This document shows positions 1 to 19,985 of a stretch of DNA of 64,000 nt, piece after piece. The stretch comes from Auanema rhodensis. Taxonomy: Eukaryota; Animalia; Nematoda. The notes below the pieces were generated by a model. The model saw nothing but the letters and a program-made list of their open reading frames with translations, was not told where the DNA came from and did no database searches. Position numbers and translations under genes: made by a program. The DNA lies in contig OZ059894.1 of assembly GCA_964057225.1 (NCBI GenBank), positions 10,292,001-10,356,000 on the forward strand, in the 5' to 3' direction. The stretch's first letter is position 1. Every line of letters starts with the position of its first letter.

Positions 1-1649
1 TTGAAGAGAGACAAACGAAATCAAAGGTGAATTGAAAAAAAAACGAAAGTAATTCATAGCGACGCGTTTATCCAGAACATGGAAGATGAGTTATGTTAGA
101 GGGGCTATAACAAGTAACAATAAACAGGATGGCGCAAGATGAGAAGCGCGACGAACACGTAGAAACAACCTAGACAGCGGAAAACTACGCCAACTCCGCT
201 CTATTGGAGAACACACTTTATTCAACGAGGGTAGTGAAAGTGAAAAATCATGGAAACAAGTCCCTCGCGGGAGAAAAGCAGAACAGATAATACACTGAAG
301 AAAATTACATGAAAGTGGCATCAGAACATTAGCGACATACTGTTGTTTCATGAATGAAATCAGATACGACAGCAGTGAAACTTTAATAAAACACTGCCAC
401 TAGAACAGACAAACCAACGTGAAGTGAGTGATTAGCAATCTGAGGCTGTAGGATGATAACATAGAAAACTGCTCCTTCCCACGGAGGCGTCCAAGACCGG
501 ACCTCTGAGGAACCAACCGGAACAGAACCGGACTTCACGGACACACGGATACCGGCATAAGTAAACATCCACACATGACGCAACGTTGATTGTCATAGGA
601 AAAAAATGATGAGGTATTTTTCTTCGTTTTGAAGTTGTCTTTCATCGTTGGCTCTTCCAATATCTATACGAAGAAATAGGATTCTGATTTTGTCCGGGTT
701 TGAAGCACAAAGAAATTGTAAAAACCATATCATATGGCATTTCTGCGGACATGCTGGAAAGACACATAGATGAGTTGATGAAAGCTAAGCACCGTCTAAT
801 ATGTCACATATTATCCATATGCTACGATCTCTTTCTTTATACTGGCAGAGAGACGTAAACAATTGTCGCATAGATCCTAAAATTTGAGAGAAAGGAGGAA
901 AGGCAATACATTCCATTTCTAACAGTTTATTTTGGAAACAGTTCTTACTGTCGAAAAGAAATGATATAAAGCATAGCTTGAGAATTTAGAATATTGCCGC
1001 TGATGCAATGAAAAGAAGAGAAAGTGCTTTGAGAAAGAATTATAGAAACAGGAAGACTTAGCCCATACATCTGTCTGCGCGAAAATTTTTCAAAAGAAAG
1101 CGAGGGAAGGTGTCAGACGACGGAAAGAGGAGAAGAACAAACCGAAAAATGGCAAACTTACAGAAACACGGCCGAGTCGTATAGATGTAGACGAAAAATG
1201 GAAATGTACTTAAATAACGCTGAGAAAGCTAATTAGCATTTCAGATATTCAAATCAATATAGATCAAAAAACGCTTCGCAACCGCACGCGAGATTTTTAA
1301 CAGAGCATGATTTTTCAATTAGTCCAAATTTATATTAGAATTTTAAGTGCTTTTACGGTATATGGAAATGATTAGTCATTTCTATATAGTAGCATCAAAT
1401 GTTACTTGTTGTGTGAAATCTAGTTACGTCTTGTCAGACCATGTTGTGTAGAAGCTGGGTGTCAGCAGACAGAGTAACATAGCTATGACCAGAAATGGCA
1501 TTTAAGTCAGACATAGTCTAGAGAAGCCAAAGAAAAAGACAAAATGAAAGTTATGTATATATTAAGATGTAATGAAATTGAGAAGCTTATAAGTAAAAAA
1601 AAAAGTGAATGATCATCCTGGTCTAAGTGGCAATTTGGTGCTTCTGTAC

Positions 1650-1714
1650 CTAATCGCCCCCGAAGCCGGTCCCGGCAACTTGGCTACTCCTCGGCCGGTT
1701 TCAAGAGAACACAT
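1650..1714 (-). CDS. Possible first coding exon of a gene running off the left end (MCSLETGRGVAKLPGPASGAIR)
   Basis: GC-rich island in AT-rich DNA; ATG at 1714, 21 open codons plus 2 nt, then donor AG|gtacag. No downstream exon identified in the window. Confidence 0.25.
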
Positions 1715-4700
1715 TTGAAAAAGCTGTTCGGAAGTGCGTAAAAACAAACAACCGAAAGAGGTAATGTTCTGAGTGAAAAATTGGAATTAAATAAAAGAAA
1801 CTTGGAAGATGCCATCACATACAAACAAAACAAGTGGAAATGTTTCCAATCAAGTTAGCAGAAGGCACAAAACACATGAGTCGGTTGGCCCCCTACCGTT
1901 TATTGCTGGTCCTTTGTATGGCAAATGCTAACTATATAAGGAAAATACAAATTTCCAGATGTGGGTGGTCCGGGACGACTGGTCCTATAGGTGAATGGTC
2001 AGCTAATGAGACAAATGTATAGTAGCAACTGACAATAAATTTAGTTATTTTTCAATATCATAATACGAATTCACTTTTCTTGTCAGCTGACCAGTTTCGA
2101 TAATAGATGAGAGAGAAGAGGGCAACAGTAAAATCTTAGATTGCATTATCAAGAGCACAAAAAAAGCGAATGCTAAAAAAGACGAGTTCAGAGGAAAGAA
2201 AAGATAAATAAAATAAGCCCATTTTTTGAAAACCTAGAGCCATGAACAATGCCATGTTATGTATGTATTATATAAGTGAACAAGAAACAGAAAATACGAG
2301 AGGAAAGAAAACAAAAACTAATAAAGAAAGTGAAAAGTAAGAGATACAGGCAAAAAAAGTGTCTGTTAGAGTTAATCGCATTTGTCATCTCTATTTTGTG
2401 CACGGGAAGAGGATACATTTGGAAACAAGAAATGGAAAATATCAACACAAAATCTATATACTCTGATTGAGGAATAGGAAAAATAGGTAAAGTGAAGGGA
2501 AAATAATGAAGGAACATAGAGACAAGATTAAAAACTCAGAAACAACGGTTATCAGCAAAATTTGGAATTGATGAATGAACAATTCGATGCAGACATAAAA
2601 CCCAGAAGCTTGTGCATATATGATTTGCGGTTAAACTGCACTTTCAAATATGAAATGTGTCTGAAAACGGAGACATTAAGATTTTATCAAAGTATGTGAA
2701 AATTCTTCATGCAGTTCAAGACAATTACATCTGACAGAGGAAGGAAGTTGATACCTTGAGAGAAGTAGAGAAGAAAACGATTGAAGAGAATAGAACTACA
2801 GATAATTTACGTTAGGTTTCGAATAAAAGAAACAATTGCCTTCAAAAAGTTCACTAGCCTAGCTTTCAATCATTGACTAAGGAATTGTTCAATAGATGTT
2901 TAGAGATACGAATTGATAATTGCTGTCTATTTATGCTTCTTCATATTAAGCTACTATTATTAAATAATTGAAAAAATAAAATAAATCAACGCCAGATTTC
3001 AGGACGTGCACAAACGCTCCCAGAGAAATAGAGAGAGAAAAAGAGAGGAAAAGGGGAATCCCATATAGTACAAATCGGACAAAAAGTACTTATGGTGACA
3101 AAGGAGAGAAAAAACTGTGTTTAAGATTGAAAAGTGCAAGGGTACGTTTAGATTCTTTCTTCAGGTCAGAGAATTTACGTGAAAGGGTAATGAATGAAAA
3201 GGAACATTTTTACTGATTAAATCAAAAATTTACTTTGTATGGTTACAATCAGAGACGAATCGTAGATATTAGATAAGATTGAGAATTTCTTCGACGAATC
3301 CATGTTAAGAAAGGGAAATGGAAGTTTCACTTGAATACGGCATATCTGGTTTTTTTCGACATTGCCCACAACATGCCAGGGAAAATAAAAAACGAAAATG
3401 AGCCAAAGATTATAGACAGATGATACATTGACCTGTTCTTAAACAGCTGAATCGTATAATATATTAGGCTCCTATCTCATATGGTTTTTGTATTTCGCGC
3501 TTTCGATTCTCATTTCTTCTTTTAACTTGTTGCCAGGCTTAACACTTCTATATGTCATAGCAAAAAATGGGGAGAAAAAGAGTGAGAATCCAGATTATAT
3601 TCGAGCCTGTATTAAATTTTCAAAAAGCAGCTAAGCTTCAGTGGAAACAAGCACGAATAACTATCACAACCTCCTTGACTGCTTTGGCATCTCGCTAACT
3701 CCTTGTTTCCTCTTTCCACAAATCTCTTTCTCTGCACCTTTTCGTTTTCATCTATTCCTCTCACTCCCTCTCTTTATACATTTGTCTCTCTTTATATTTT
3801 TGTCTCTCTATCTTTTTCTATTTCTCTACCTCTCTCTGACTGACGAACCGGTTAGCCGGCCTAGTAAGTCAACATGCTACTTGGCACTTGAATAGAAAAA
3901 TAGAAAAAGAAAAAGGGAAAAGAACGCAGGAATAGATGTAGAAAGTGAGAGATGTCAAGAGAAAAATATAAGAAAAAAGGATTACTAGGAACATATGAAA
4001 AGCAATGCCACTAAGATATGTAATTCATGCTATTTTCTATGATACATATATTTGGAAGAAAACTGGATATATACTATGAAAATGATGATTGTGATCGGTT
4101 AAAAACTAGGTGTCTACTATATGTTAACCAAAACTACAAGAACTACAAGAGGTCAAGTTATGGTTGAAAACGACAAAGAAATGCATAATATTGATCATAA
4201 AAATTTCATAAGTTAAAACAGGATAGACAGGTACCCAACTGAGACAGACAGTCTCGTCTTTTTCTGTATTTCGTAAAAGTAACACGTTTTACAACCTTTT
4301 ACGATACATATATGTATAAAATTCATGTTGTGTTACTATTGAAATATCCTATACTACCTCCTTCGAAGATAACTCGAGGGCATGTCTGTGTATGAAAAGA
4401 GTCAAGCTGGGGGTAGTCTAACTACAGAGAGGAAACGATGAAGAAAGTGAGAAAGAAGTTCGAAGTAGCATTGTTATAAATCAATCATATCTAATGATGG
4501 TTAAGAATTTTTGCTATTTGTTGTTTGATTGACTGATTATAAGGCAATTTTCGATACAAAAAACAAAAGTCAGCTGCTCAGAACATTTATGAAACATTCT
4601 CCTGCAATACGTTTGATAAGAAACAAATGTATAATTGGTCAGTGAATTCTATCTATTTATCTTTAAATACATATATTATCTGCTTCTAATATTTCTTTGT

Positions 4701-7700
4701 TTCATAGGCAATTTTCAGATATTGCTTATCGTCCAATCAAAACCACCCACCACCAAATTTAAAATTAATTCTCTCTAATTTGCTTTCATACAAAAGCGCT
4801 AATAGAAAAAAAAGTTGGGATGAATTACAACAATTTGTATGACATGGCGAAATGAGAAAATAGAATTGAAGATCATGAAGATGACGATTCAAGAGGTCCA
4901 AATATCGTAAAAATAGTTATAAAAAGCTGTACTAATTACTGTTATAGTTAATAGATAGAAAAAACTGGACTTTCTTCTTCATCATCCTTCTGTTTCTATT
5001 TCTCTTTTGAAATATCATCATAATATATAAATTGAAAGATGATATGATATGGTATAGTGAGAGCATCTGAAGTAATGAAGACTTCCTAGAGATCAAAGAG
5101 TACAAGACGCTTTTGAAATGTCAACGAAACAATAGTGTTTTTGTATCTCGTATTCCCACCTTCTTTCTAATTCCTATCATTCATTGCTCTAAAAAAAACA
5201 ACCAATTGTGATTAACTGGTCTATTTTTTCGTTTTACAGTATAAAAATAGATGAAATAATCCATCCAAAGCTAACTTTGCTCAAAGAAAAAAAATCGATT
5301 GATTAAGAAATCAATAAAAGGTCAGATGATCTTCATATTTTAGGAAGTCAATTGCTCATGTTTATTTTAATACTTAATACTATCCATATTCTGAAAAAGA
5401 AAAGGTATTTATGATTATAATAACAAGAAGGCAGACGATTTTGTGTATAACTAGCAATAATTATTCAATTTTCAAGATAAGAATGGAAAAGTACATTGAT
5501 TATCATAATGAAGTGTCTGCTTGATTATTTGATCTCTGAGAATTCGTAGTTATAGAGGTGTCCGATTTGCAAATAAAAGTATGAAATATCATTTTGAGAT
5601 ATTTTTGTTGCTGATTTGAGTGTAGAATCCTGATTACATTCATAGTTATTTACCAAAGAAAAAACAACTGAAAAAAGTTGTTGTTTTGTTATGAAGGATT
5701 TTCTTTGTCTACTTTTCTTTGAAATATTTTTCAGGAAAAGATTTCTAATCATCTGCTATGGTGAATACGGTAAAGTTCAACTATCGTAAACAGATTCGAA
5801 AGGAATGGATGAATGGGTGAATGATGGTGATGGAAGAGAACAAGATTTGTATCGGCACCTTTAAGGGTTTTCGTCAATTCTACTCAGAAAAAGTTTCCTG
5901 TTGATCCGATGCTTCTCATTTTTTATTGGGAGAAATTATATTGAATCTGATCGAATCATAGCGATAGATATGAACATGAAAGCGAAAAGCAGTTTGCCAT
6001 TTAGGATTATCTTGCAAGCTTTGAAGCTGTCATTATACCATGATATAATCTCACGCAACACCTGAAATCGATGAATAAATTGAAACTGGAAAGCAAAAAA
6101 ATCAAATATCATATCAAATAATGGTCATTAAAACGGTCGGCAAGATGAAGCATTTCTCTTACTTTCACTTCTTCGTTCCGTCATCATCTGTCTCTTTTCT
6201 CTAGTTTTTTCATTCTCGCAGCAGGTCTTACGAAGGTCAATTTGCGATGGCAGAGTGCCAATCTTATTTTCTAAGAAAAAAGGTGATCATATCGTAAATC
6301 GGGATCTAATAACTATGAATTTAATCGCGAAAATATAAATTAATTTAAAATATCAGAGATTGTGAAACAATTAAATTTGAAAAATATGAGGAGTAATTTT
6401 CAAGTGAAGAAAAGAAAATCAGATGAAACAATTTTTTTTTGCTGCAAAAAACAAATTCTAACAGAAACTTTTTCGTAGATGATGCCTAATTAGCATATCA
6501 CGCAACTTCAAATACAGTGACGTGACAAATCAAACATGACATTTCTATTTTTTGAATTTGGCATTCGCAGGATTGGTTGATTTCACAGGTAGGTAAGATT
6601 TTCTATTTTTCAAGTGTTTGCTCTGATAAATCATTGAGGGCAGTAGTCGTTTTTCCCATCTGATTTTCGGCGTGTATTTGCTCTAAAAAGTTCACGTGGT
6701 TCATATCTGAAATGTGCACTGAGCCCGTAAGATGAGACGTGTGGCACATGATGAAGCCATATACAAATGACAAAGAAGATTCTATTCATAAACCGAAACA
6801 ATTTGTTACTGTACGCTTTCGCATGTTCAGTTAAACAATTTATTTGAATAGAAATCTTGCTAACTTTTAAACAAAAGGCAGTCATAATGCATAGCATATG
6901 CGTCTGTTTTTAGAAAGCCACCAACCATTTTAAAATACAATTTCGATAAATATAGTCAAGATGGGGTTACTGTTTACCAATTAAAAATCGATAGGGAGCT
7001 GGTTTGTAATTTTGAATCTATTTCTGCCATACGCCAATGCGATTGTTTAGAAAACAACCTTTATTGTTGTTATTTTTTATGTTGCATTAGAAATATAATA
7101 TTGTGTCAAGTTAAATTGATTGAATGCCTGAAACTTGGGGTGAGGCAGTTTATACTTCTAGAACAGCTGTTTCAAGTTCCATCAAGTTGCGCACGCGCAC
7201 AATAAAGTTTCAGTCCAGATCAGTATTTCTCAACTAGACAAAATAAACCAGAGAAGCGTACGGAAGCTTTTTCCATATTATTGGCACTCATTTTTCCATT
7301 ATTAAACATCGATATAGTTTCCTCAATACTTCAAAGAATGCTTCATAAGCTATAGAATCGGCAAACATCCAAATAATGTTACATGAGCAAAAGAGGAAGG
7401 TCGTCTTTGTTAAAATTTGGCGCCCACATCTTCGCGCACTTGTGGTGTTGTCATTTTAAGAATTCTTCGTCATCTAATGACCGAATCGCAACATGAAAAC
7501 AGCCAAGGTCATACCGACCACCTTCACTATTTCATTCCTTATATGAAGTTTCACTTTCGCTTGAACTTTGTAACTATTTACCATTTATATAAGGTGTGAT
7601 GATCTAAAATATAAACATCGGTTATTATTGCTGTCGAAGAGTATATATATATATAATATATATATTTAGTGCGGCATATCGAAAGAACGATGAGATATTC

Positions 7701-8814
7701 TGAGAATTTTCAATTAATTGTGAAAGTTTGTGTATCTATAGATCACCATTTGCTTCAGCTTAACTATGGGCAAAGGACAGTTTTCGTACACAACGACTAT
7801 GATGATGATACCTGATCAGGGCAGTTGGCTTGATTAATGAGAATTAAGAACATCAAGTTCATTGAACAACTCTAGGGGATGAATTGGTGGTATTTTTTTA
7901 AAGTCAATCAACTATAAAGATATGAAGTTATGGGATTTTCGGGTAATGTCATGAGTTGTCATTCATTTTCGTCACATGCTATGGCAAATGCATATCTCTT
8001 GTTCACGTCCTTTTAAGCCATAAAAAATATTAGAAATTGAATAACATACATAGTGCCTCGTTTTCGAATACACGGGTTTTACCGATTTTTTTTTACATCT
8101 TGAAAAGATGTAACCGGCAACATTATCCAACTGTTCATCAGCCTTGAAGACATATTGTGGTTCTAAAACAATCACTCACGTGATGTTTTCTGGCACAGTC
8201 TTATCTAGTGGGACTCGAGCCAATCTTTGAATTCGACTATGGAGGTCAGCTGACTTGAGCCCAAACAAACCATGTGATATTATATTTAGTTACGTAAGGT
8301 TCAGAGTCAAAAAAGAAATAAATAAATTTTGGTGTTTCATAGCATGTGTTTGAACATTTTGAGATACTGAAGACGCAATGAAGACAAAAGATTCACTCTG
8401 AATGTAATCTTGTGAAAATGAGGGATTAGAGAGACTAGAAAAAACCCAATAAAGCACTCGTGTTGCCTCAAATTTTTGTGAGAAAGTGATACATATCTTT
8501 TGCATGCGGAGAAGTACAGTCCTACAACCTCTTTTCCCAAAATTTATTCTCAATTGAATTCAGAGAAAAAGTAATGAGTCATTTGAAACTCACCACCTTT
8601 AACTAAAAAAACCTTTTATCCTTCTAAATTTCACTTGGATTCCCTTTTTATATTTTTCGTTTGCTAATTCATTTAGGAGATCAAACGAAGTGATTAATCT
8701 CATTTTATCGTTTTAGCATAACGAAATACAAGAAGTTGTACGTGGATTTCACGAGAACACGCAATTGGAATTTTAAAGACATTATAACTCATTAATTGAT
8801 TATCCAATGATAAT

Positions 8815-9010
8815 ATGCCCATTACGAGTGCTTTACTAGCGACTGCAGTCATAGTACTTCTGATATATGGATTAGGATTGCTGCCGTATCTGATATCAAA
8901 ATACAGGTTTGTATCACAACCAATCGCGTACTTACTTTAAATACAGGAAACAGCTTATACCTTCTGATTCTGATGACTCAACATCAACACCAGATCATCA
9001 ACACCGATGA
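8815..9010 (+). CDS. Small single-pass membrane protein, 51 aa (MPITSALLATAVIVLLIYGLGLLPYLISKYRKQLIPSDSDDSTSTPDHQHR)
   Basis: Exons 8815-8906 and 8947-9010, joined in phase by a 40-nt gt..ag intron; ~22-aa hydrophobic stretch followed by KYRK; in-frame stop upstream of the ATG. Confidence 0.5.
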
Positions 9011-9124
9011 AAACAAAAAAGAAAGGCTACCCATTACTAATATTTATTATTTCTTGTGATATGCTGTGATGAAAGATCACATTATCATTCAAGCAGCATA
9101 CATTTTTCTCATATATTTCGAGAA

Positions 9125-12100
9125 TTAATAATGATTTCTATAATATAATTGTCTTCGACTCCTTTGATTTTCTTTTTCCGTAGACTCGGTAGAATCGTCC
9201 TCCTCATTACTATCCATTTCGTCACAAGTAATTCCTTTTCTACCTGCTGGACATCTTTTGCACTGAACTAAATCAGCTTCGTTTACAAAACATTCTCCCT
9301 GTTCTCTGAATAAAGTATTAAATTTATTAGAATCAAAAAACTATATATATACGGGCATGGACATGTTGTGCAATCTTCCGCAGTTCCCTCTAAAGATGAT
9401 CCATAAAATCCAACACTACAACGTTCACAACTATCTCCTTCGGTATTATGCTGGCAATTCTATAATGACAAATAATCGTTTTAGAACATTCAGTTTATCC
9501 ATGTATCACATGAGAATATTTTTGAAAATCATTTCTAGTTTTAAATTAAAGGTTGTGTTGAAATTGTAATATGAAAATGTTCTATGTAATATTCGCAACG
9601 CAATGAATCGAGTATGCAATTAAATTTTTGTTTTACTTAAAGAATCTAGTAGAAAAATGGAAAAAACAGTGATTAAATAAATTATTTTTACCAGACAAAT
9701 TCCACTGGAGTCGCATTCAGATGAATGACCGTTACATGCACATGAAGGAGTGTCTCTCTCCTCTTCTGTTTCAACAGTTGGAATTGGGTCACAATTTCCG
9801 ATCAGTGGATCTCCAGAAAATCCTTCATCACATCTAAAAGTTGTTTACAAGTATTTTCAATTTCTTATTGGTATATACTTATGGCACTGAACTCCATAGG
9901 TGTTGTCGGTACAATTTGTACACGTAAAAGTAATTGGATCACATGTATCTGAATGGTTGTAACATTCGCAAGAACCATCATAGTTCAAATATATTCGAAC
10001 ACAAATAGGAAGGGATTGTTCAGCGCGTACTCGTAATCTCTCACTACTAATTTCCTTAGCATGCTTTACTAAACGAGCAGCAAGAATCTGGGTTGAATGA
10101 TTTCCAGCAATACGTAAATCTTCAAATTCCTATAAAAAATGAAAATGAAATTGAATTTATTATGTATTATTCACTTCAGCTGTGTCATCACCAAACATAT
10201 GAGCAATGAAGTGACGACAACCAATATCGATAGTCTCTTGGGCGTCTTCTTTCTGTTCTCCCTCGGCACTCTGATAGAAATCATACACCTAAACACAACT
10301 CAAAATAAATAAAGAAAGTTGATAGTATTCAACCTTGTCGTACACCTGAGCATCACCAAAATTCTGATCTTGTATCATAACTCCAAGTGTCATTTTTTGA
10401 GAAGCTGTCAGCCAACTGGTTAGATCAGCTGGCTTAAATTGAACAAGACGGAAAATTTTTCGGCAAAATGCTCCATAACGATCTATTTAGAGAATATGAT
10501 ATATATTTAGTAAAACAAAGTTTACCAGCTACTTGTCTATCAGCTTCATTCAACAGATCACTAACAATTTCTTGATAACGGGTCTCTATTTGATCCACAG
10601 GAACATTATCCATGTACAAACCTTTTAGAATTTCCATATTTTCTTCTCCCAATAATCTCCACATATTATTAAGGCAATATTCCTTCAAATGCCTAAAATA
10701 TATTAACGTAAGAATAAAATTACAATGAAGTATTACGGTTCATATTGTTCTCTTAAATTTTTCCTCAAATGATAAAATTGGTTCCCAATTACGTTCATAA
10801 CCTCCCAAGCATCTCCTCCATTCCTTTTTAAACGAGAAATAATAATTTTCTTTAAAATTTTAAACATTAGAAATCAACATTGAGGAATTTGAATTACATT
10901 TCTTTCAGTTTGCCACTTGAGCCAATCTCTTTTCAAAGGTTCTGGTAAACTTTTATTATCAGTGTTTGTTGGGCCTGAAAAAAAATAAAATTATGTAATT
11001 GTATATTCAGATACCCACTCTCATCTCCAACTTGTCTAGGGCGTCTTCTTAAATCCGCTTTATAATTGAAGAATTCTCGAACAAGTTCAGTTTTTTTGCT
11101 TTCTGACATGCCATTGAAGAATCGGCGAAGCTAAAAACCTGTCAAAGTTAATTGTGTCCTTGGTGTTTAGAATTAAGAATTTCTAATGCTCCAAATTGAA
11201 CTTGAGACTTTATCAGAAACAATATCTTTGTTTCCATGTAAAAAATACTGGAGTATCATTAGAAAAACAAAGTGAACCTAGTATCTATCGCAATATCAAT
11301 AATTGAACAAGTTAATGTTTTGAACAAAAAATTTAAAACTTACAGCAATTTCAATATCTTGCTTTCTTCCAGTTACACGGTATAAATGATGGAGTTCATT
11401 CAATTGCCTTGGTGATAAAAGTTCCTCAATGTGAATAGCATCTTCACTTCCCAAATATCTAAAATTATTAAAATCATTACAGAAAAATATATTTATTTAC
11501 CTTTTTTTAAGGTCCAGTATTCTTTGATATTTTTTGATTAAAAATTGAGTATTTTTCAAGCAATCTTCATCGTCTGGCTTATTAATTTCTCTTGCTAATT
11601 TTATTGCGAAGTCTCTGTAAATGTTTAAAAACTTATCAATTTTTATCAATTTTTATTATCTTTTAGGCGAAAATTATTTTTTTAAGTTCAAAAAATCAAT
11701 AATAAATGACCACGCCGCGTGATTACTCACGTAATTTTAATGTCAATTTTAAAATTAACGTTAGGAAAACCAGCTGTACGTGGAGAACTACCATAGAAAA
11801 TTAAATCCTACAAGAAAATATTGAAAACGTGACTAATCATAATTTTTCTCAGCTTAGTGTCCCTCCCTCGCCAATTACGTTTGTTCAGTTACTTATAAAT
11901 TCCAAATAAAAGTTTTTGTTGGAATACAAAACGAGGAAGTCACACAGAACAATTGTCAATCGAAGCAAAGAATTTAAGATTGACAGCGACATATGAATAT
12001 ATGTATATATCTACTGATGAATGACACTATGATTTGATGGAGAGTTTAAAATAACTGAGTGATGTAATAAGATATTTGGTTTAAGGACACAAATTAAATA

Positions 12101-12516
12101 ATTTAGGTACTAAGATAAAAATTGCGAAATACTATTTGGTTGCTATTGATCAAATTTTGAGAGAAAACGATGTACCTGAAATGAAAGAAATGGCCCTTAA
12201 TCAGTAAATTCTGAAGGGCTGTTCTTTTATCCTCTTCTATATCTTCTATCCATGAGGTACAGTCATCGAGCCGTGTAATCAGAGCTCTCCTAGTGGCAAC
12301 CAGACGTTCCTCAATTGACTGTGCAGATTGTTCTTCTGATACTTCGTCCTAAATGGTGAAGTGTACTAAGCCACCATTACTGAAATAGCTCAGTTTTTGT
12401 TGAAATGCAAAAAACTAAATTCAGTAATAATAGATTATAAAAAATCATACGTGAGGATAACAATATGCATAGCCAATGACAACTACTACAACAATAGTCT
12501 TTAGAAGGCGTATCAT
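9125..12516 (-). CDS. Secreted protein (~625 aa): signal peptide + 2-3 divergent NPA/ABA-1-type lipid-binding units + ~2.7 laminin-type EGF (LE) domains + acidic tail
   Basis: 14 phase-consistent exons traced from ATG 12516 ([22 protein letters not shown]) to TAA 9125. NPA-like segments: [20 protein letters not shown]...LKEYC..LLGEEN...CRKIF and SWLTASQK...[35 protein letters not shown]...CVRIY. Then [45 protein letters not shown] and [47 protein letters not shown] (8-Cys LE pattern), and a 6-Cys partial LE. Confidence 0.88.
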
Positions 12517-13495
12517 TGTGGATTAGAAGTTGTCGGCAATTGTCCACGCTCCAAACGACCAATCCAACGGCTTTTCGCCCGGTTGTAGTCCAATTGTCCT
12601 CTTATCAATTCCGTTAGACAAAATTTCGACCGATATCAGCTGATATTCGGTTACTATTCTAGGATATTTTTGTAATTTATAAGTCTTTATTAATGGCGAT
12701 ATCACAAATTTTCGCAACATTTGCGGTCTGGAACTGGAAGAATGTTTCCAGATACCATATTTGCAACAAGGTAAATTTTTTATAGTTAGAAATTCAGAAG
12801 TTTTACAATGGAAAGAATCTGAGAATCCAAAAATAATAAAGAAATACCATTAATGAACTCAGAACAAAAAAAAGTATACAGAAAACAAAGGTTATATAAT
12901 TAGGTGAAACGGAGAAAAAATGACTGAAGATAATAGAAAATTGATTTATATTTTTACTCTCCGTGTCATCGAAACATCAACATTGAGACACAGATGAAGA
13001 GAAGACCGTTCAATCGATCGGACGTGCCGTCGTTGTATCTGATATTATCACAACAGCCACGAAACATCATCAAGGGGGGAAAGAAATAGGAGACATGTCG
13101 ACGACGTTATGCTGAAACTAACTCATCTCTCAAGCTATCATCAGTCTTGGAAGCCAAAATGCTTTCTGTTCTTTCCTGTTCAATCATCTCAGTCAGACAT
13201 TGACGTGAATGTATTCTTAAAAATGATTCACGGAACAGCACTTTCCTTGGTGAAGTAATACTTGACGTTCGAGGCCCTGACATCCATCACGTCTATCAAC
13301 TGTCATCATAGGCGACATGCCTTCCCCCAAAGTCGTACCCGACATATGTTGATAAAGAAACAAATTTTTGAGAAAACTCAGATAAACGATCAGTTTTTCC
13401 AACATCAGGGAATAATTTATTTCGTATTAATTTAATAATGTATATATATATTAATGAATTCATATTAAAAAACAATAAAAAAGACTAATGAGGAT

Positions 13496-16400
13496 CTACC
13501 AATAATTGTCTCGGCGCAAGCGAGCGGAGCTACCAAAAACTTTACTACACCCGGCCACCAGATGCTTGGCATCTTGCTTCTTGTCATCACTAGGTAGGTC
13601 GTCAATGAAACCAGTAATCTTCGCAACCATTTCTTCGTGAGTTGCTCCGCTTTCTTTATAAACCTTCATTTCTTGAGCCTTTTCAGATCCGAAAATATCC
13701 TCAGCGTAATGCTTGCATGCTGCTTTCAAATCCTCTCTAGCTTGTACTTTCACGTCTCCTTGAGCTGCAGAAAAGAATAACATAACTCTGTCATGAATAG
13801 CCTTTCTGTCTCCTTTCAGAGTTTTAAGTTCAGCTTTTTGCTCAGCAGTTGTCCAACTGAGGTATTTAGATAATTCTTCTTCAAATGAGTGTTCATGACG
13901 TTTTTTCCTTCCGATTACTTCATAAACTTTTTTGCATTTATCAGTGATTTTCTGGGCTTTCGCCTTCTTTTCTTCATCATCCATTGCATCGATGAGAGAT
14001 TGAACTTTGGCTAACATATCTTGTTGGCTTCCTCCAGATTCCTTAACGGCCTTAACCTGAGCATATCCGTCTTCTCCAAAAATGTCAAGTCCATAATGCT
14101 TGCAAGCACTCTTAAGCTCTTCAGTGGCAGTAGCCTTCACACTTCCTTCAGCTGATGAGAAGAATTCCATAACCTTCTTGTACACAGCATCCTTATCCTC
14201 AACATTTTCCAATTTTTTCAATTCTTCTTTTTGTTCATCAGTAATCCAAGTAAGGTACTTCTCAAAAGCTTCCTCGAGAGTGTGGTGGTGATCACGTCTC
14301 TTACGGCTGGCAACAGCTTGATAAACCTTTTGACACCCGGCTGTGAGCTTCTGGGCCTTGGTCTTCTTGGCCTCATCAGGTAAAGCAGCAATCAACTCTT
14401 GAATCTTAGCGAGCATAGCCTCTTGAGAGGCTCCAGATTCCTTAACAGCCTTGATTTGAGCTACACCATCGTCTCCGAAGAGATCGGCAGCGTAGTGCTT
14501 GCAAGCTCCCTTGAGTTCTTCAGCAGCCTTCTTCTTGGTTTCACCTTCAGCAGCCTCAAAGTACTCCATGACCTTTTTGTACATAGCTTCTCTATCTCCA
14601 GCCTCCTTGATCTTCTTCAGCTCATCTTTCTGATCATCAGTAGTCCAGGTGAGGTATTTCTCAAAGGCTTCTTCGAGAGTGTGGTGGTGATCACGTCTCT
14701 TACGGCTGGCAACAGCTTGATAAACCTTTTGGCATCCGGCTGTGAGCTTCTGGGCCTTGACCTTCTTGGTCTCATCAGGTAAAGCAGCGATCAGCTCTTG
14801 AATCTTAGCGAGCATAGCCTCTTGAGAGGCTCCAGATTCCTTAACAGCCTTGATTTGAGCTACACCCTCTTCTCCGAAGAGATCGGCAGCGTAGTGCTTG
14901 CAAGCTCCCTTGAGTTCTTCAGCAGCCTTCTTCTTGGTTTCACCTTCAGCAGCCTCAAAGTACTCCATGACCTTTTTGTACATAGCTTCTCTATCTCCAG
15001 CCTCCTTGATCTTCTTCAGCTCATCTTTCTGATCATCAGTAGTCCAGGTGAGGTATTTCTCAAAGGCTTCTTCGAGAGTGTGGTGGTGATCACGTCTCTT
15101 ACGGCTGGCAACAGCTTGATAAACCTTTTGGCATCCGGCTGTGAGCTTCTGGGCCTTGACCTTCTTGGCCTCATCAGGTAAAGCAGCGATCAGCTCTTGA
15201 ATCTTAACGAGCATAGCCTCTTGAGAAGCTCCAGATTCCTTAATAGCCTTGATTTGAGCTACACCATCGTCTCCGAAGAGATCGGCAGCGTAGTGCTTGC
15301 AAGCTCCCTTGAGTTCTTCAGCAGCCTTTTTCTTGGTTTCACCTTCAGCGGCTTCGAAGTATTCCATGATTTTTTTATAAATAGCTTCTTTGTCATCTGC
15401 CTTGGTTTTCAAATCTCTGAGTTCGCTTTTCTGTTCTTCAGTAGTCCAAGTTAAGTATTTTTCAAAAGCATCTTCTAAACTGTGGTGATGATGATCTCTG
15501 CGTTTACGACTAACTGCTCGGTAAATCTTGTTACAGACTGTGCTCAGTTTCTGTGCTTTTCCCTTTTTTTCTGCATCGGTAAGACCATTGATGAGCGTTT
15601 GAATCTTAGCTACAATATCATCATGGCTTCCTCCAGACTCCTTCAAAGCTTTGATTTGAGCTACACCATCTTCTCCGAAGAGATCGGCAGCGTAGTGCTT
15701 GCAAGCTCCCTTGAGTTCTTCCGCAGCCTTCTTCTTGGTTTCACCTTCAGCAGCCTCAAAGTATTCCATAACTTTAGCGTATAGAGCATCTTTGTCTCCA
15801 GATTCCTTCAACATTCTCAATTCTCCCTTTTGAGCTTCTGAGGTCCAGCTTAAAAACTTTTCGAAGGCCTCCTCGAGAGTGTGGTGGTGATCACGTCTTT
15901 TACGGCTTGTAACAGCTTGATAAACCTTTTGGCATCCAGCCGTGAGCTTCTGGGCCTTGGTCTTCTTGGCCTCATCAGGTAAAGCAGCAATCAGCTCTTG
16001 AATCTTAGCGAGCATAGCCTCTTGAGAAGCTCCAGATTCCTTAACAGCCTTGATTTGAGCTACACCCTCTTCTCCGAAGAGATCGGCAGCGTAGTGCTTG
16101 CAAGCTCCCTTGAGTTCTTCAGCAGCCTTCTTCTTGGTTTCACCTTCAGCAGCCTCAAAGTACTCCATGACCTTTTTGTACATAGCTTCTCTATCTCCAG
16201 CCTCCTTGATCTTCTTCAGCTCATCTTTCTGATCATCAGTAGTCCAGGTGAGGTATTTCTCAAAGGCTTCTTCGAGAGTGTGGTGGTGATCACGTCTCTT
16301 ACGGCTGGCAACAGCTTGATAAACCTTTTGGCAACCGGCTGTGAGCTTCTGGGCTTTGGTCTTCTTGGCCTCATCAGGTAAAGCAGCGATCAACTCTTGA

Positions 16401-17095
16401 ATCTTAGCGAGCATAGCCTCTTGAGAGGCTCCAGATTCCTTAACAGCCTTGATTTGAGCTACACCATCCTCTCCGAAGAGATCGGCAGCGTAGTGCTTGC
16501 AAGCTCCCTTGAGTTCTTCAGCAGCCTTCTTCTTGGTTTCACCTTCAGCAGCCTCGAAGTACTCCATGATTTTCTTATAAACAGCTTCTCTATCTCCAGC
16601 CTCCTTGATCTTCTTCAGCTCATCTTTCTGATCATCAGTAGTCCAGGTGAGGTATTTCTCAAAGGCTTCTTCGAGAGTGTGGTGGTGATCACGTCTCTTA
16701 CGGCTGGCAACAGCTTGATAAACCTTTTGGCAACCGGCTGTGAGCTTCTGGGCTTTGGTCTTCTTGGCCTCATCAGGTAAAGCAGCGATCAACTCTTGAA
16801 TCTTAGCGAGCATAGCCTCTTGAGAAGCTCCAGATTCCTTAACAGCCTTGATTTGAGCTACACCATCTTCTCCGAAGAGATCAGCAGCGTAGTGCTTGCA
16901 AGCTCCCTTGAGTTCTTCAGCAGCCTTCTTCTTGGTTTCACCTTCAGCAGCCTCAAAGTACTCCATGACCTTTTTGTACATAGCTTCTCTATCTCCAGTT
17001 TCCTTGATCTTCTTCAACTCATCTTTCTGATCATCAGTAGTCCAGGTGAGGTATTTCTCAAAGGCTTCTTCGAGAGTGTGGTGGTGATCACGTCT
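13496..17095 (-). repeat. Coding tandem repeat, ~399-bp unit x9 (NPA units)
   Basis: DHHHTLEEAFEKYLTW motif recurs about every 399 nt; five units are nearly identical at the DNA level. Confidence 0.95.
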
Positions 17096-19985
17096 AGTTC
17101 TTATTTCCTTAAACGCAAAACTACAGAATGCTTGACGTTATTGGTTCAAACCTTGACTTCCCATGCGAAATAACATAAATCACGGGTATGTTCAACTGTG
17201 TGCTTCTGGGCATCACTTAACCGGTCTTCTAATGATGAAATTTTTTCTTTCAGCTAAAAAGAAATGAACGTATTTATTTGAAAATAAGTATATACCTTTG
17301 TTACTTCACCATCGTTTCTCAAGTTTTTCAACTCAGTAAGTTCATCGGGAGTTGCTACCTCTTTAACCCATTTGGCACAAATTTCCTAGAGATCAAGCTT
17401 AGCCAATATAATGGTACAGTAGAATTTACCTTGAAGTCCTTCTTCAGTTCAGCTTGTCTACCTTCAGGCTGTGCCTTATAGATTTCTTTTATCTTAGCTA
17501 CGATAACATCAAATTCAGCTCCAGAATTTTCCAACTCCTACAGTCAAAATAAATATGAAGAAAGTAAAATAAGTATACAAACCTGAACAGAGGCTTTCTC
17601 TTCAGGCGAAAGCCACTTTATATACTCATCAACAGCTTGTAAATGTCTTCTTCTTCTTTGGCTATTTCTGGCGTGATGCTTATGATGGTCGTGATGATCG
17701 TGATTATCGTGATTATCATGATTATCGTGATTATGGTGATCGTGGCTGCCGTACCAAACTTTTTCACAGAAGGGAAGATCTTCATTTACTTTGGCCTTAA
17801 AATATATAGCATGTAAAGAGAGCTAGCATTACAACACGTACCTGTTTCTCAGCTGATAATCTCTTTATGAATTCGCGGACCTTTTCTTTACATGCACCAT
17901 GATTAGTCTCATGCAATTTATGTAAGCTCTCAATCTCTTCCTTAGTGGCTACTTCATCCATCCAAGCGTAGCATTTCTGAATAATTCAAAAATATATAGG
18001 ACAATATTTTCAGCATACCTTTCTCGTTTCTTCCTTAGCTGACGTTTTGGTATTGCTGTCAGTAGCTGACAAATATTTGAAAAGTTTTTCCTTGATTTCA
18101 TTTCTTGGTACACCTCTCTCAACCATACCTTTGATCTCCTGAATGAAAAAGTTAAAAAATAATTGATATTCAAACTTACATCTTGTTGTTCTTTGTTCAA
18201 CCAAGTCAAGTGTTTTTCAATTTTTTGCATAACGTCACGCTTCTTCTTGCCGCCTTGAAAAACCTCTTTGCAAATCTGTACATAGTCTATTTTCTATCAG
18301 TCTTATAGAAACAAAGCTAACCTCAGATATTTTAGCTGCTGATTCCTTAACTGAGCCATCTTGGCGCTCAATTAGAGCCTTGATGAGGCCTTCAACCTAT
18401 AACAACACACATGAAAAAATCACAAATATTCATATTAAACCTCAACAAAATTTTCTGCTTCATGTGCTTTCTTAATTGAGGCGATTTCTTCGGGAGTGCC
18501 AATCTTGGTGAAGTATGCCTGAAGAAATTATGTAAGAAATTTCATAGAAATAATAATAGTTTACCTTGCATTTAGCTTTGTATCCTTCTCTGAGCTCCTT
18601 CTGCTTATCTTCAGGAAGAGATTTGAAAAAATCCATAGCTTTCTCTCTTTGCTCTAACAAAGATTTACCAGCGGATTTCAGTTCACCTATAAGCATTGCT
18701 CGGCATAATGTATGTTTTTTTTGAATTAAGAGCTCCCAGGGGAGAACATTTCAAAAATTTTGAGACATCCACAATGTTCTGAATATGTTTACTAACCCAT
18801 TTGTTTTTTCTGATCATCAGTCATCCACTCAATGAAGTCCTCTGGAGAGGGATCTACACTGCGAACGCCCCGGGAATACGCTTCAAAAACCATTTGGACA
18901 CTTTCGTCATCAAATTCCTTCAAATTACAATTTAACATTGCTTTCAATAGTACGGACATAATTATTTCATAACAAATTTAGAACTCACCGAGTTGATAGA
19001 TCTTCTTGAGCGAGCAGCATCATTAAGAGCATCGCATTCGCTCTATAATTAACTTTAGTTTATTTTAAGAAAAATTTGCTTACTCTCCAAATAGCGATAG
19101 CCTTCTGTTCTCTCTCAGTGGTCCTGCTCTCATACGACTTCATCTTCTGTTTAGCAGCGGCCGCATCAGAGGCAAAGAGTTCCTTCAATTCTGATAATTC
19201 TTCAGATGAAAGAGCCTGATCATTGCCGAATTTTAGAGGGGATTCAATACAAAACATGCATACCTTTTCTAACCAAGAGTTGCAACGAGTACGATAGTTC
19301 TCATCCCAAACCTTACGAGTCTCGTCATCTACTCCCTTATAGAATTCCATTACTTTATTTTTGAATTCTTCCATGTTTCCACGAATCTTAATGAAGATAT
19401 TTTTATAAAAAAAATTGGTAATAGTCACTCACTGGTTCAAGAATTTCTTTTTGTTCATCATTCAACCAACTATCCAAAGGAGGCAAAAACTTAGCACTGA
19501 AAAGAATTCAATTTTGTTTTTTATCAAAGTTCTCTAGTTAAGGATTTGTGTCATTTTTGATTTCGAATAAAGATTAAAAACAAGAAAGATTTGAGAATTA
19601 ATGCTGGCATTTGAAATTTAAATGTGACCAATTGACATCAAAATAGGGCGATAACAAGATCTAACATGGTTTGATGAATTCTTATCATAAACACAATAAA
19701 CAAAGCTTTTTAATTAAACGTTAATACAAGCGAATTAGACGATAAAAAAGTTGACTGTCATAAATTCATATATGTATATTCGACTAACCTAGCATCTTCC
19801 GGTTTAGCATGTCTACTTGAACGTAACCTTATATTGGCCGAAACCTGAAAATAAGATGCTAATGAGGATTTATTTATTAGGAATGTACAAATATATTAGA
19901 ACATTTGTTTGGATGTTGTGAAATTCTTTAAAAAACTAAAACTTACCAATGCAATGCCCAAGAGGGCAATACAAAGGACTCGCAT
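13496..19985 (-). CDS. npa-1: Nematode polyprotein allergen/antigen (ABA-1/gp15-400 family fatty acid and retinoid-binding polyprotein), 13 units, roughly 1800 aa
   Basis: Signal peptide MRVLCIALLGIALVSA from ATG 19985; four divergent intron-split units; final exon ~17107-13496 with nine ~133-aa units separated by RKRR/RTRR/RKKR convertase sites; conserved W and two Cys per unit; AATAAA ~75 nt after the stop. Confidence 0.96.

What the first reader, a model, noticed from the sequence alone, without database searches (positions are those of the whole stretch)
9125..12516. Chimeric gene: NPA lipid-binding units fused to laminin-type EGF domains, in tandem with npa-1
Seen: ~1 kb downstream of npa-1, on the same strand, is a separate gene with its own signal peptide and 14 in-phase exons. 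The ORF track shows only one 84-aa fragment of it. It has two clear NPA units plus a degenerate first one, running directly into two complete LE domains and a partial third. The CTTCPCP...[17 protein letters not shown] segment resembles the LE pair following the L4 domain of laminin chains. Known: NPAs are normally cut at RX(K/R)R sites into soluble ~15-kDa fatty acid/retinoid carriers, and LE domains are rod or interaction modules of basement membrane proteins. Here no tetrabasic site separates units 2 and 3 or unit 3 from the LE block; only LRRRPR follows unit 1. Inference: an uncleaved lipid-binding module tethered to matrix or cell surface, possibly a dock or exchange partner for the soluble NPA units next door, forming a two-gene lipid transport system. 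I cannot tell whether an orthologue is already annotated beside npa-1 in other nematodes.
Basis: partly seen in the sequence, partly recalled or inferred. Interest (0 to 1): 0.82.

Follow-up and report, generated by a model that had tools for sequence, protein, structure and literature searches.

The report
VC5.2-type NPA–laminin-EGF fusion gene
A real, expressed nematode gene just downstream of npa-1 encodes a secreted protein that joins two uncut NPA-type (lipid-carrier fold) modules to laminin-type EGF domains. It is the orthologue of the annotated but unstudied C. elegans gene VC5.2, so the gene is not new, though its function is unknown.

Summary
A 14-exon minus-strand gene (12516..9125) with canonical GT-AG introns gives a 626-aa protein. 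One ~2.1-kb spliced contig in each of four public runs (one study) follows all 13 introns. This moves one donor by 12 nt (exon 9 ends at 10334, not 10346).

The protein has these parts:
- a signal-like N-terminus
- a ~160-aa helical N-domain
- a basic RRRPR site
- two NPA units that keep the NPA Trp and both cysteines (the NPA Gln only in the second)
- two complete LE domains plus a six-cysteine third
- an acidic tail

The "degenerate first NPA unit" is not confirmed. The gene is not novel. The same architecture (Pfam NPA + laminin EGF) is annotated across Rhabditida, including C. elegans VC5.2 (Q9TYU4). It lies next to npa-1 in C. elegans, Auanema and Pristionchus. No paper characterises it.

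New points from this work:
- An RxxR site after the N-domain is kept in all 14 clade V orthologues aligned across the site.
- No orthologue has a cleavage site between the NPA units or before the LE block.
- ABA-1A cavity-lining positions in the second NPA unit stay apolar.

My best reading is a convertase-processed, matrix-held, uncleaved NPA-type lipid binder. That function is inferred, not shown.

The parts
9125..12516 (-). Coding part of the gene: 14 exons (12516-12451, 12348-12176, 11614-11501, 11458-11344, 11130-11019, 10974-10898, 10849-10737, 10692-10526, 10482-10334, 10288-10175, 10129-9879, 9833-9692, 9459-9353, 9305-9125), giving 626 aa
   Evidence: Model built. All 13 introns are spanned by one spliced contig in each of 4 runs.
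9030..12660 (-). Transcript extent: 5' UTR of about 144 nt, 3' UTR of about 95 nt, AATAAA at 9048-9043
   Evidence: Contig ends (12660 in two runs; 9030-9094). AATAAA read.
12451..12516 (-). Exon 1: signal-peptide-like N-terminus (aa 1-22; the most hydrophobic 15-aa window of the protein)
   Evidence: Kyte-Doolittle maximum at aa 1-15. Most full-length orthologues also start with a hydrophobic stretch. No signal-peptide predictor was available, so this is inferred.
11050..12348 (-). N-domain (aa 23-183, exons 2-5): conserved all-helical domain with two invariant Cys and one invariant Trp; no recognisable relatives
   Evidence: Alignment A3. AF2 model of the Auanema orthologue has pLDDT 82. No specific match by Foldseek, VIA or Atlas. 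hhalign to NPA gives only 10-18% probability.
11035..11049 (-). RRRPR (aa 184-188): candidate proprotein-convertase site (RxxR) between the N-domain and the NPA units
   Evidence: An RxxR motif sits at this position in all 14 clade V orthologues aligned across the site (one search counts 13/17 over all clades). Cleavage itself is inferred.
10427..10960 (-). NPA unit 'U2' (aa ~199-331, exons 6-9): keeps Trp15 and both Cys; Gln20 is replaced
   Evidence: Pfam NPA on exon 8, E 1.2e-3. Local HMM E 1.4e-9. hhalign to npa-1 units, probability 98.6%.
9977..10426 (-). NPA unit 'U3' (aa ~332-451, exons 9-11): keeps Trp15, Leu16, Gln20 and both Cys; runs directly into LE1
   Evidence: Pfam NPA on exon 10, E 2.2e-5. 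Local HMM E 1.9e-17. hhalign probability 99.0%. In the orthologue, ABA-1A (2xv9) matches at E 1.5e-8 by sequence and TM 0.63 by fold. Residue conservation.
9791..9970 (-). LE1 (aa 454-498, 8 Cys), spanning the exon 11/12 junction
   Evidence: Pfam EGF_LMN_ATRN on the exon 11 C-terminus, E 1.5e-3. All Cys are invariant in A4.
9370..9742 (-). LE2 (aa 515-561, 8 Cys), preceded by a 16-aa acidic linker (aa 499-514) that is modelled with low confidence
   Evidence: Pfam on exon 13: EGF_LMN_ATRN 8.7e-8, EGF_laminin 6.4e-5, both above cut-off. Linker pLDDT is below 50 in the orthologue model.
9224..9363 (-). LE3, truncated (aa 564-594, 6 Cys; ends after the C5-C6 pair)
   Evidence: Cys pattern read and conserved. 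The LE block best matches perlecan region 3, laminin beta1/gamma1 and netrin.
9128..9223 (-). Acidic, Ser/Thr-rich tail (aa 595-626) with a non-conserved RSRR; no hydrophobic anchor
13496..17979 (-). Neighbouring npa-1: 9 NPA units cut by RKRR-type sites, plus an upstream partial unit

Best explanation
This is the single-copy orthologue of C. elegans VC5.2. The family is nematode-specific and conserved, and it most likely arose from npa-1 by an old local duplication followed by fusion to laminin-type EGF modules. SHOWN: it is transcribed and spliced as one mRNA. It encodes a hydrophobic N-terminus, a helical N-domain, RRRPR, two NPA-fold units, two complete LE domains plus a truncated third, and an acidic tail. 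The units keep the NPA structural hallmarks. No convertase site lies between the two units or between unit 3 and the LE block in any orthologue. An RxxR after the N-domain is kept throughout clade V. INFERRED: the protein is secreted. A kex2/furin-type convertase cuts once, at RxxR, and frees the N-domain as a pro-piece. The remaining ~440 residues stay in one chain, in contrast to NPA-1, which is chopped into free ~15-kDa carriers. The LE stalk holds the two NPA-type pockets in an extracellular matrix or on a cell surface. There they bind or store fatty acids, retinoids or similar small apolar ligands locally instead of circulating.
For: Gene and transcript. NPA units. On the 74%-identical Auanema orthologue P0024: Pfam NPA 141.9 bits, ABA-1A E 1.5e-8, predicted fold against 2xv9 with TM 0.63 and rmsd 4.1 A over 131 columns. 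NPA hallmarks as defined in PMC3079579: Trp15, Leu16, Gln20 and both Cys are invariant in unit 3 across 18 orthologues. Of the 23 ABA-1A cavity-lining positions mapped onto unit 3, 13 of the 14 apolar non-Gly/Cys ones stay apolar in most orthologues. LE domains. RxxR conservation and absence of inter-unit sites. Orthology and synteny with npa-1. Single copy, and every Pfam NPA match found in the 181-Mb genome lies in the adjoining npa-1 gene. Epidermal expression of a C. elegans VC5.2 reporter in the male tail tip: PMC10802606.
Against: No ligand binding, secretion, cleavage or localisation has been measured for any family member. Two cavity I positions have changed: Tyr112 to Arg in most orthologues, and Phe116 to an invariant Ser. 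Two of the four basic residues at the cavity II mouth are acidic or neutral. Unit 2 lacks Gln20 and the Leu next to Trp15. Trp15 and the Cys pair are structural features and do not prove binding. RxxR is only a minimal convertase motif. The signal peptide was judged by eye and by hydropathy only. A VC5.2 mutant showed no D-type axon guidance defect (PMC3774775). The RNA evidence is assembled contigs from one study whose library type is only guessed to be RNA, although spliced contigs are hard to explain otherwise.
Confidence: 0.5

Rival explanations
1. It is a structural or adhesive matrix protein in which the NPA-derived helical units no longer carry lipids. They would act as spacers or protein-interaction modules, and the LE domains would do the functional work, as in perlecan, laminin or netrin.
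For: Family-wide changes at cavity positions (Tyr112 to Arg, Phe116 to Ser, acidic residues at the cavity II mouth). Unit 2 has lost Gln20. The best-conserved features are structural (Trp, Cys). The only published description calls VC5.2 'similar to Perlecan'.
Against: Of the 14 mapped apolar (non-Gly/Cys) cavity-lining positions in unit 3, 13 remain apolar across clades III-V. That is more than fold maintenance alone would obviously require. Two units have been kept for the whole history of Rhabditida.
Confidence: 0.27
2. One reading: the protein is a matrix or surface dock, or an exchange partner, for the soluble NPA-1 units encoded next door, so that the two genes form one lipid transport system.
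For: Same-strand adjacency to npa-1 is kept in the window, Auanema and Pristionchus. It is implied by merged gene models in Diploscapter and Nippostrongylus, and holds with one gene between in C. elegans. Both genes are transcribed in the same samples.
Against: Adjacency is what tandem duplication leaves behind and needs no functional link. In Strongyloides ratti no NPA gene lies within 10 kb. In C. elegans an opposite-strand gene (MYST-family, Pfam MOZ_SAS; mys-1 from memory) separates them, so there is no shared operon there. No interaction evidence exists, and I ran no complex prediction because neighbourhood alone does not justify it.
Confidence: 0.1
3. It is a gene-model artefact: two genes (an NPA-like one and an LE one), or a pseudogene, wrongly joined.
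For: Exon-level Pfam scores for NPA are below the 27-bit cut-off when exons are scanned separately.
Against: One contig per run spans all 13 introns, including exon 11, which encodes both the end of NPA unit 3 and the start of LE1. The frame is open throughout. Orthologues in at least 20 species are colinear.
Confidence: 0.02

Closest known systems
C. elegans VC5.2 (NP_504797.1, UniProt Q9TYU4, 'Laminin EGF-like domain-containing protein', uncharacterised) and its annotated orthologues (e.g. Auanema sp. JU1783, Haemonchus, Dictyocaulus 'laminin EGF-like protein', Strongyloides ratti, Thelazia, Parascaris)
   Same: Colinear over the full length (37% identity to VC5.2, E 3e-135; 74% to the Auanema protein). 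Same Pfam set of NPA x2 + EGF_LMN_ATRN + EGF_laminin. Same invariant Cys and Trp. Same RxxR after the N-domain. Same neighbourhood with npa-1.
   Different: This species and Auanema have a 16-aa acidic linker between LE1 and LE2 and a short basic C-terminus. Clade III/IV members show three Pfam NPA stretches. In C. elegans an opposite-strand MYST-family gene (mys-1 from memory) lies between npa-1 and VC5.2; here the two genes are directly adjacent.
Nematode polyprotein allergens/antigens (NPA-1, ABA-1, gp15/400; Pfam PF16469; structure 2XV9)
   Same: Same unit fold and hallmarks: buried Trp15, Gln20 (unit 3), the Cys64-Cys120 pair and mostly apolar cavity linings. Nematode-restricted. Encoded at the same locus.
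   Different: Only two units. They are about 20-27% identical to npa-1 units. There is no K/R-x-K/R-R site between them, so they cannot be released as ~15-kDa carriers. They are fused to a unique N-domain and to LE domains.
LE (laminin-type EGF) modules of perlecan domain III, laminin short arms and netrin/UNC-6
   Same: Eight-Cys LE pattern. Best fold matches are perlecan region 3 (E 4e-7), laminin beta1 LN-LE1-4, UNC-6 and laminin gamma1 LE. Sequence matches to netrin-1, perlecan and laminin are at E 1e-5 to 1e-7.
   Different: No LN, L4/laminin IV, Ig or coiled-coil domains. There are only two complete LE modules and a truncated third, so this is a borrowed module and not a laminin or perlecan family member.

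Membership tests
NPA (Pfam PF16469, nematode polyprotein allergen unit) | Profile match above the curated 27-bit cut-off | tested here: met
   Exons scanned singly give 25.6 and 19.9 bits, because each unit is split over 3-4 exons. The 74%-identical orthologue P0024 gives 141.9 bits with 2 stretches. The joined model scores 78 bits against an HMM of the window's own npa-1 units (local script only).
NPA (Pfam PF16469, nematode polyprotein allergen unit) | Absolutely conserved Trp15 with adjacent Leu/Met (PMC3079579) | tested here: met
   Trp is present in both units. Leu follows it in unit 3; Gln follows it in unit 2.
NPA (Pfam PF16469, nematode polyprotein allergen unit) | Conserved Gln20 | tested here: inconclusive
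   Invariant Gln in unit 3 across 18 orthologues. Replaced by Asn or His in unit 2.
NPA (Pfam PF16469, nematode polyprotein allergen unit) | Two absolutely conserved Cys forming the helix D to helix G' disulphide | tested here: met
   Both Cys are present in both units and invariant in A4. The bond itself is not testable here.
NPA (Pfam PF16469, nematode polyprotein allergen unit) | ABA-1A fold (seven helices, two bundles) | tested here: met
   AF2 model of orthologue units 2-3 (pLDDT 86) against 2xv9: TM 0.63 by target, rmsd 4.1 A, probability 1.00. Tested on the orthologue, not on the window protein.
NPA polyprotein (the npa-1 / ABA-1 type of gene) | Tandem units separated by K/R-x-K/R-R cleavage sites and released as ~15-kDa proteins | tested here: not met
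   There is no basic site at the unit 2/3 boundary or the unit 3/LE boundary in the model or in any of 17 orthologues. It is therefore an NPA-domain protein but not a polyprotein.
NPA (functional) | Binds fatty acids and retinol | not testable with these tools
   The only evidence is conservation of apolar cavity-lining positions.
Laminin-type EGF domain (PF00053 / PF24973) | Profile match above cut-off and the 8-Cys pattern | tested here: met
   Exon 13 gives 32.6 bits (cut-off 27) and 23.5 bits (cut-off 21). LE1 and LE2 have 8 Cys each and LE3 has 6. Orthologues score 60-75 bits.
Laminin / perlecan / netrin families proper | LN, laminin IV (L4), Ig or coiled-coil domains next to the LE repeats | tested here: not met
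   No such Pfam hit on any exon or on 7 orthologues.
VC5.2 orthologue group | Full-length colinear similarity, shared domain order, single copy, shared neighbourhood | tested here: met

The most novel reading that the evidence does not exclude
The VC5.2 family is a nematode-specific way of immobilising a lipid or retinoid carrier in extracellular matrix. A convertase-released prodomain would keep the two NPA pockets closed or chaperoned until secretion. The LE stalk would then fix them in cuticle-forming or basement matrix, creating a local depot or gradient of fatty-acid, retinoid or other apolar signals. This depot could be loaded from, or unloaded to, the circulating NPA-1 units encoded next door.
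Probability: 0.2. Interest if true: 0.65.

Novelty: new member of a known kind. Interest (0 to 1): 0.4.

Why it matters
NPAs are textbook nematode-only lipid carriers and major allergens and antigens, and they are always described as polyproteins cut into free units. A second, equally old NPA-domain gene seems to have escaped the literature. Its units are never cut apart and are welded to matrix-type LE modules. It is present from ascarids and spirurids to Caenorhabditis. The two papers that name VC5.2 call it perlecan-like or list it in an expression table. Because C. elegans has the gene, the question is cheap to test with knock-in tags, knock-outs and recombinant binding assays. If the units do bind lipid, this would be a matrix-tethered lipid-binding protein found only in nematodes, conserved in parasites, and therefore of interest for parasite biology. 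For this window, though, the result is mainly a correct annotation of an orthologue.

Tried and rejected
(1) Is the N-domain a degenerate NPA unit? Single-sequence and profile hhalign give only short matches (probability 0.5-18%, best E 1.4e-3). An AF2 model of the domain (pLDDT 82) finds no ABA-1A match by Foldseek against PDB, VIA-wide or the ESM Atlas; the hits are generic four-helix bundles. The second half (aa ~125-180) lines up weakly with the first half of an NPA unit, and S. ratti has a Pfam-detectable truncated unit there. Parascaris, however, has the N-domain plus three full units, so I leave this open.

(2) The word search could not be used with exon-sized queries because of its length window. 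I therefore ran the exhaustive representative search once, with exon 11.

(3) The look-up of encoding contigs had no record for the Haemonchus and Nippostrongylus proteins. The Thelazia contig is too short upstream to judge synteny.

(4) Literature searches for PF16469, and for NPA together with laminin EGF, found nothing on the fusion.

(5) I did not run complex prediction. I do not claim binding to NPA-1, and adjacency alone is not a sufficient reason.

(6) Joined-model step. Those searches used exon references or the orthologue P0024. The exons were joined only inside local scripts, for translation, an HMM built from the window's own npa-1 units, blastp against already fetched proteins, and MAFFT.

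Full report
THE GENE. On the minus strand between 12516 and 9125 I rebuilt a 14-exon model by reading the three frames and pairing AG acceptors with GT donors. Every boundary is canonical and the frame is open. A stop lies three codons upstream of the ATG.

I looked for public runs holding the stretch. Four runs of one study turned up, each holding 41% of the sampled words; the exons make up about 55% of the stretch. When laid on 8800-13500, each run gave one contig of 2030-2113 nt. Each contig skips exactly the 13 predicted introns (all CT..AC on the + strand), has no mismatches, starts at 12600-12660 and ends at 9030-9094. An AATAAA sits at 9048-9043.

The only difference from my first model is the donor of exon 9. 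The transcript uses AAG|GTTGAA (exon end 10334), not CAG|GTGTAC (10346). This adds four residues and gives 626 aa.

The run type is only guessed to be RNA and the data are assemblies from a single study. Still, a contig without introns is hard to explain as anything but cDNA. Exon 10129-9879 encodes both the last helices of an NPA unit and the first six cysteines of an LE domain, and it lies in the middle of that contig. The NPA and LE parts therefore belong to one mRNA.

DOMAINS.
- Pfam NPA (PF16469) hits exon 8 (E 1.2e-3, profile positions 59-111) and exon 10 (E 2.2e-5, positions 42-77).
- EGF_LMN_ATRN hits the end of exon 11 and the end of exon 12.
- Exon 13 scores above both curated cut-offs: EGF_LMN_ATRN at 8.7e-8 and EGF_laminin at 6.4e-5.

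Inside a local script, an HMM built from the nine units of the window's own npa-1 ORF finds two complete units in the joined model: aa 210-327 (E 1.4e-9) and aa 334-447 (E 1.9e-17). Profile-profile comparison of each unit (18 orthologues) with the npa-1 units gives probabilities of 98.6% and 99.0%.

The LE block holds 22 cysteines as 8 + 8 + 6. That is two full LE modules separated by a 16-residue acidic linker, then a third module that stops after the C5-C6 pair. The tail is acidic and has no hydrophobic anchor. The N-terminus is the most hydrophobic 15-residue window of the protein.

RELATIVES. An exon-sized query cannot find full-length proteins in the word search, and the novelty claim rests on relatives. 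I therefore ran the exhaustive search once, with exon 11. It returned about ten proteins of 480-720 aa that match across the whole NPA-to-LE junction. They come from Trichostrongylus, Thelazia, Parascaris, Strongyloides ratti, Mesorhabditis, Pristionchus, Strongylus and three Caenorhabditis species. Most are named 'Laminin EGF-like domain-containing protein'.

Two word searches with alignments of these proteins added Haemonchus, Nippostrongylus, Angiostrongylus, Dictyocaulus, Necator, Teladorsagia, Auanema, Diploscapter and the Elegans-group Caenorhabditis. Nearly all carry precomputed PF16469 + PF24973 + PF00053; four partial or short entries lack one or both LE families. The C. elegans member is VC5.2 (NP_504797.1, Q9TYU4, 588 aa, 'uncharacterized protein').

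The closest relative of the window protein is the Auanema sp. JU1783 protein P0024, with 74% identity over 600 aa. VC5.2 is 37% identical over 613 aa. The window therefore belongs to an Auanema-like clade V rhabditid. This is an inference; the organism is coded.

In the window's own 181-Mb assembly the gene is single-copy. Every Pfam NPA match reported there lies in the neighbouring npa-1 gene. This gene's own split units were not picked up by that six-frame scan.

SYNTENY. The order npa-1 then this gene, on the same strand, appears widely.
- In C. elegans chromosome V the order is npa-1 (+), an opposite-strand MYST-family gene (Pfam Tudor-knot/zf-MYST/MOZ_SAS; mys-1 from memory), then VC5.2 (+).
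- In Auanema and in Pristionchus entomophagus a multi-unit NPA gene lies directly upstream on the same strand.
- The Diploscapter and Nippostrongylus gene models wrongly merge the last npa-1 units with this gene, which implies the same order.
- In S. ratti no NPA gene lies within 10 kb.
- The Thelazia contig is too short to tell.

Tandem duplication is the simplest reason for it.

LITERATURE. 'VC5.2' occurs in two papers of the library. One tested a mutant for D-type motor axon guidance, found no defect, and called the gene 'similar to Perlecan' (PMC3774775). The other lists a reporter as expressed in the male tail tip and absent from the hermaphrodite tail tip (PMC10802606). Searches for the Pfam accession, and for NPA together with laminin EGF, found nothing on the fusion. 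A recent C. elegans apical-matrix tagging toolkit included NPA-1 but not VC5.2. The family is annotated but functionally untouched, and its NPA content is not mentioned in any paper I could search.

WHAT THE COMPARISON ADDS.

(a) Cleavage logic. NPA polyproteins are cut at K/R-x-K/R-R between units (PMC3079579), and the window's npa-1 has RKRR-type sites after each unit. In this family, no orthologue has a basic site between units 2 and 3 or between unit 3 and LE1. An RxxR motif does follow the N-domain in all 14 clade V orthologues aligned across the site: RRPR, RVAR, RSPR, RSVR, RHRR, RKPR, RSKR, RVRR, RIRR, RVQR, RKSR, RNPR. I read this as a single conserved convertase site that releases the N-domain. 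That is inferred. The window protein also has RLKR inside unit 2 and RSRR in the tail, but neither is conserved.

(b) NPA hallmarks. The structure paper defines Trp15 (with Leu or Met after it), Gln20 and the two cysteines as the invariant NPA positions.
- Unit 3 keeps all of them in 18 of 18 orthologues.
- Unit 2 keeps Trp and both Cys but not Gln20.
- I mapped the ABA-1A cavity residues through the HMMER alignment. Of the 14 mapped apolar non-Gly/Cys positions, 13 remain apolar across the family.
- The exceptions are Tyr112 to Arg, Phe116 to an invariant Ser, and two of the four basic mouth residues.

(c) Fold. An AF2 model of the Auanema protein's units 2-3 plus LE (18-sequence alignment, pLDDT 86) shows seven helices per unit. 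It matches ABA-1A (2xv9) with TM 0.63 by target and rmsd 4.1 A. The LE part matches perlecan region 3 best (E 4e-7), then laminin beta1, UNC-6/netrin and laminin gamma1.

(d) N-domain. It is conserved (two invariant Cys, one Trp) and confidently helical (pLDDT 82), but it has no detectable relative. Foldseek, VIA-wide and the Atlas return only generic helical bundles. hhalign to NPA reaches at most 18% probability. 'Degenerate first NPA unit' is therefore possible for its second half but not shown.

READING. The identity, as the VC5.2 orthologue and an NPA-domain plus LE-domain secreted protein, is close to certain. For function I commit to a secreted protein that is processed once at RxxR and whose two uncleavable NPA-type modules are held in matrix or at a surface by the LE stalk, where they bind small apolar ligands. 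I put about 50% on that.
- About 27% goes to a purely structural role with lipid binding lost.
- About 2% goes to a gene-model artefact; the rest is unassigned.

NOVELTY AND SCORE. This is a new member of a known, annotated family, not a chimera peculiar to this genome. Interest is moderate. The family-level observation is a good, cheap lead in C. elegans: an overlooked, never-cleaved NPA paralogue fused to LE modules, with a conserved prodomain site. But nothing in this window goes beyond orthology.

LIMITS. The joined protein was analysed only in local scripts. Family, PDB, fold and structure tools saw exons or the Auanema orthologue. RNA evidence is contigs from one study. No signal-peptide predictor was available. 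Clade I/II nematodes were not examined.

Noticed in passing
window 13496-17979 (-): npa-1: one long exon with 9 NPA units (about 133 aa each, ending in RKRR, RKKR or RLRR) and a further partial unit upstream at 17809-17979. Every Pfam NPA match reported in the 181-Mb, 112-contig assembly lies in this gene. The 125-127-aa plus-strand ORFs at 14399-17173 are antisense echoes of the repeats.
   Followed up: partly
window 10334-10345 and 10277-10288 (-): Exon 9 ends with codons for VYDK and exon 10 starts with VYD(F), a short duplication across intron 9. A second in-frame GT donor lies 12 nt upstream (10345). All four contigs use the distal donor; use of the proximal one would delete VYDK.
   Followed up: partly
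window 12658-12660, 12891-13061, 13236-13396 (-): Contigs from two runs start at exactly 12660, right after a 'tcctag' acceptor-like motif. Unitig assemblies break where a spliced leader joins, so this could be a trans-splice site and not a promoter start. Low-depth fragments (depth about 3) lie between the npa-1 stop and this point, possibly the npa-1 3' UTR or read-through. Whether the two genes share a primary transcript is open.
   Followed up: no
window 10823-10834 (-), aa 225-228: A full RxKR motif (RLKR) lies inside NPA unit 2 of this species. It is absent from most orthologues (3 of 17), so it is probably not a used site.
   Followed up: partly
P0010 (C. auriculariae), P0039 (Diploscapter), P0022 (Nippostrongylus): The C. 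auriculariae model carries a C-terminal hydrophobic segment and a basic tail that no other orthologue has (a real membrane-anchored variant, or a merged gene). The Diploscapter and Nippostrongylus models have npa-1 units fused to their N-termini, probably mis-merged neighbours.
   Followed up: no
window 170-7530 against L004 14550-21450: Translated matches show that the region downstream of the gene is also collinear with the Auanema sp. JU1783 contig, so microsynteny extends beyond the npa-1 / VC5.2-like pair.
   Followed up: no
P0001 (3995 aa) and P0002 (2532 aa): The top two hits of the exon 11 search are giant proteins made of 33-64 LE-like stretches. They match only the LE half of the query and are unrelated to the NPA part.
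   Followed up: no
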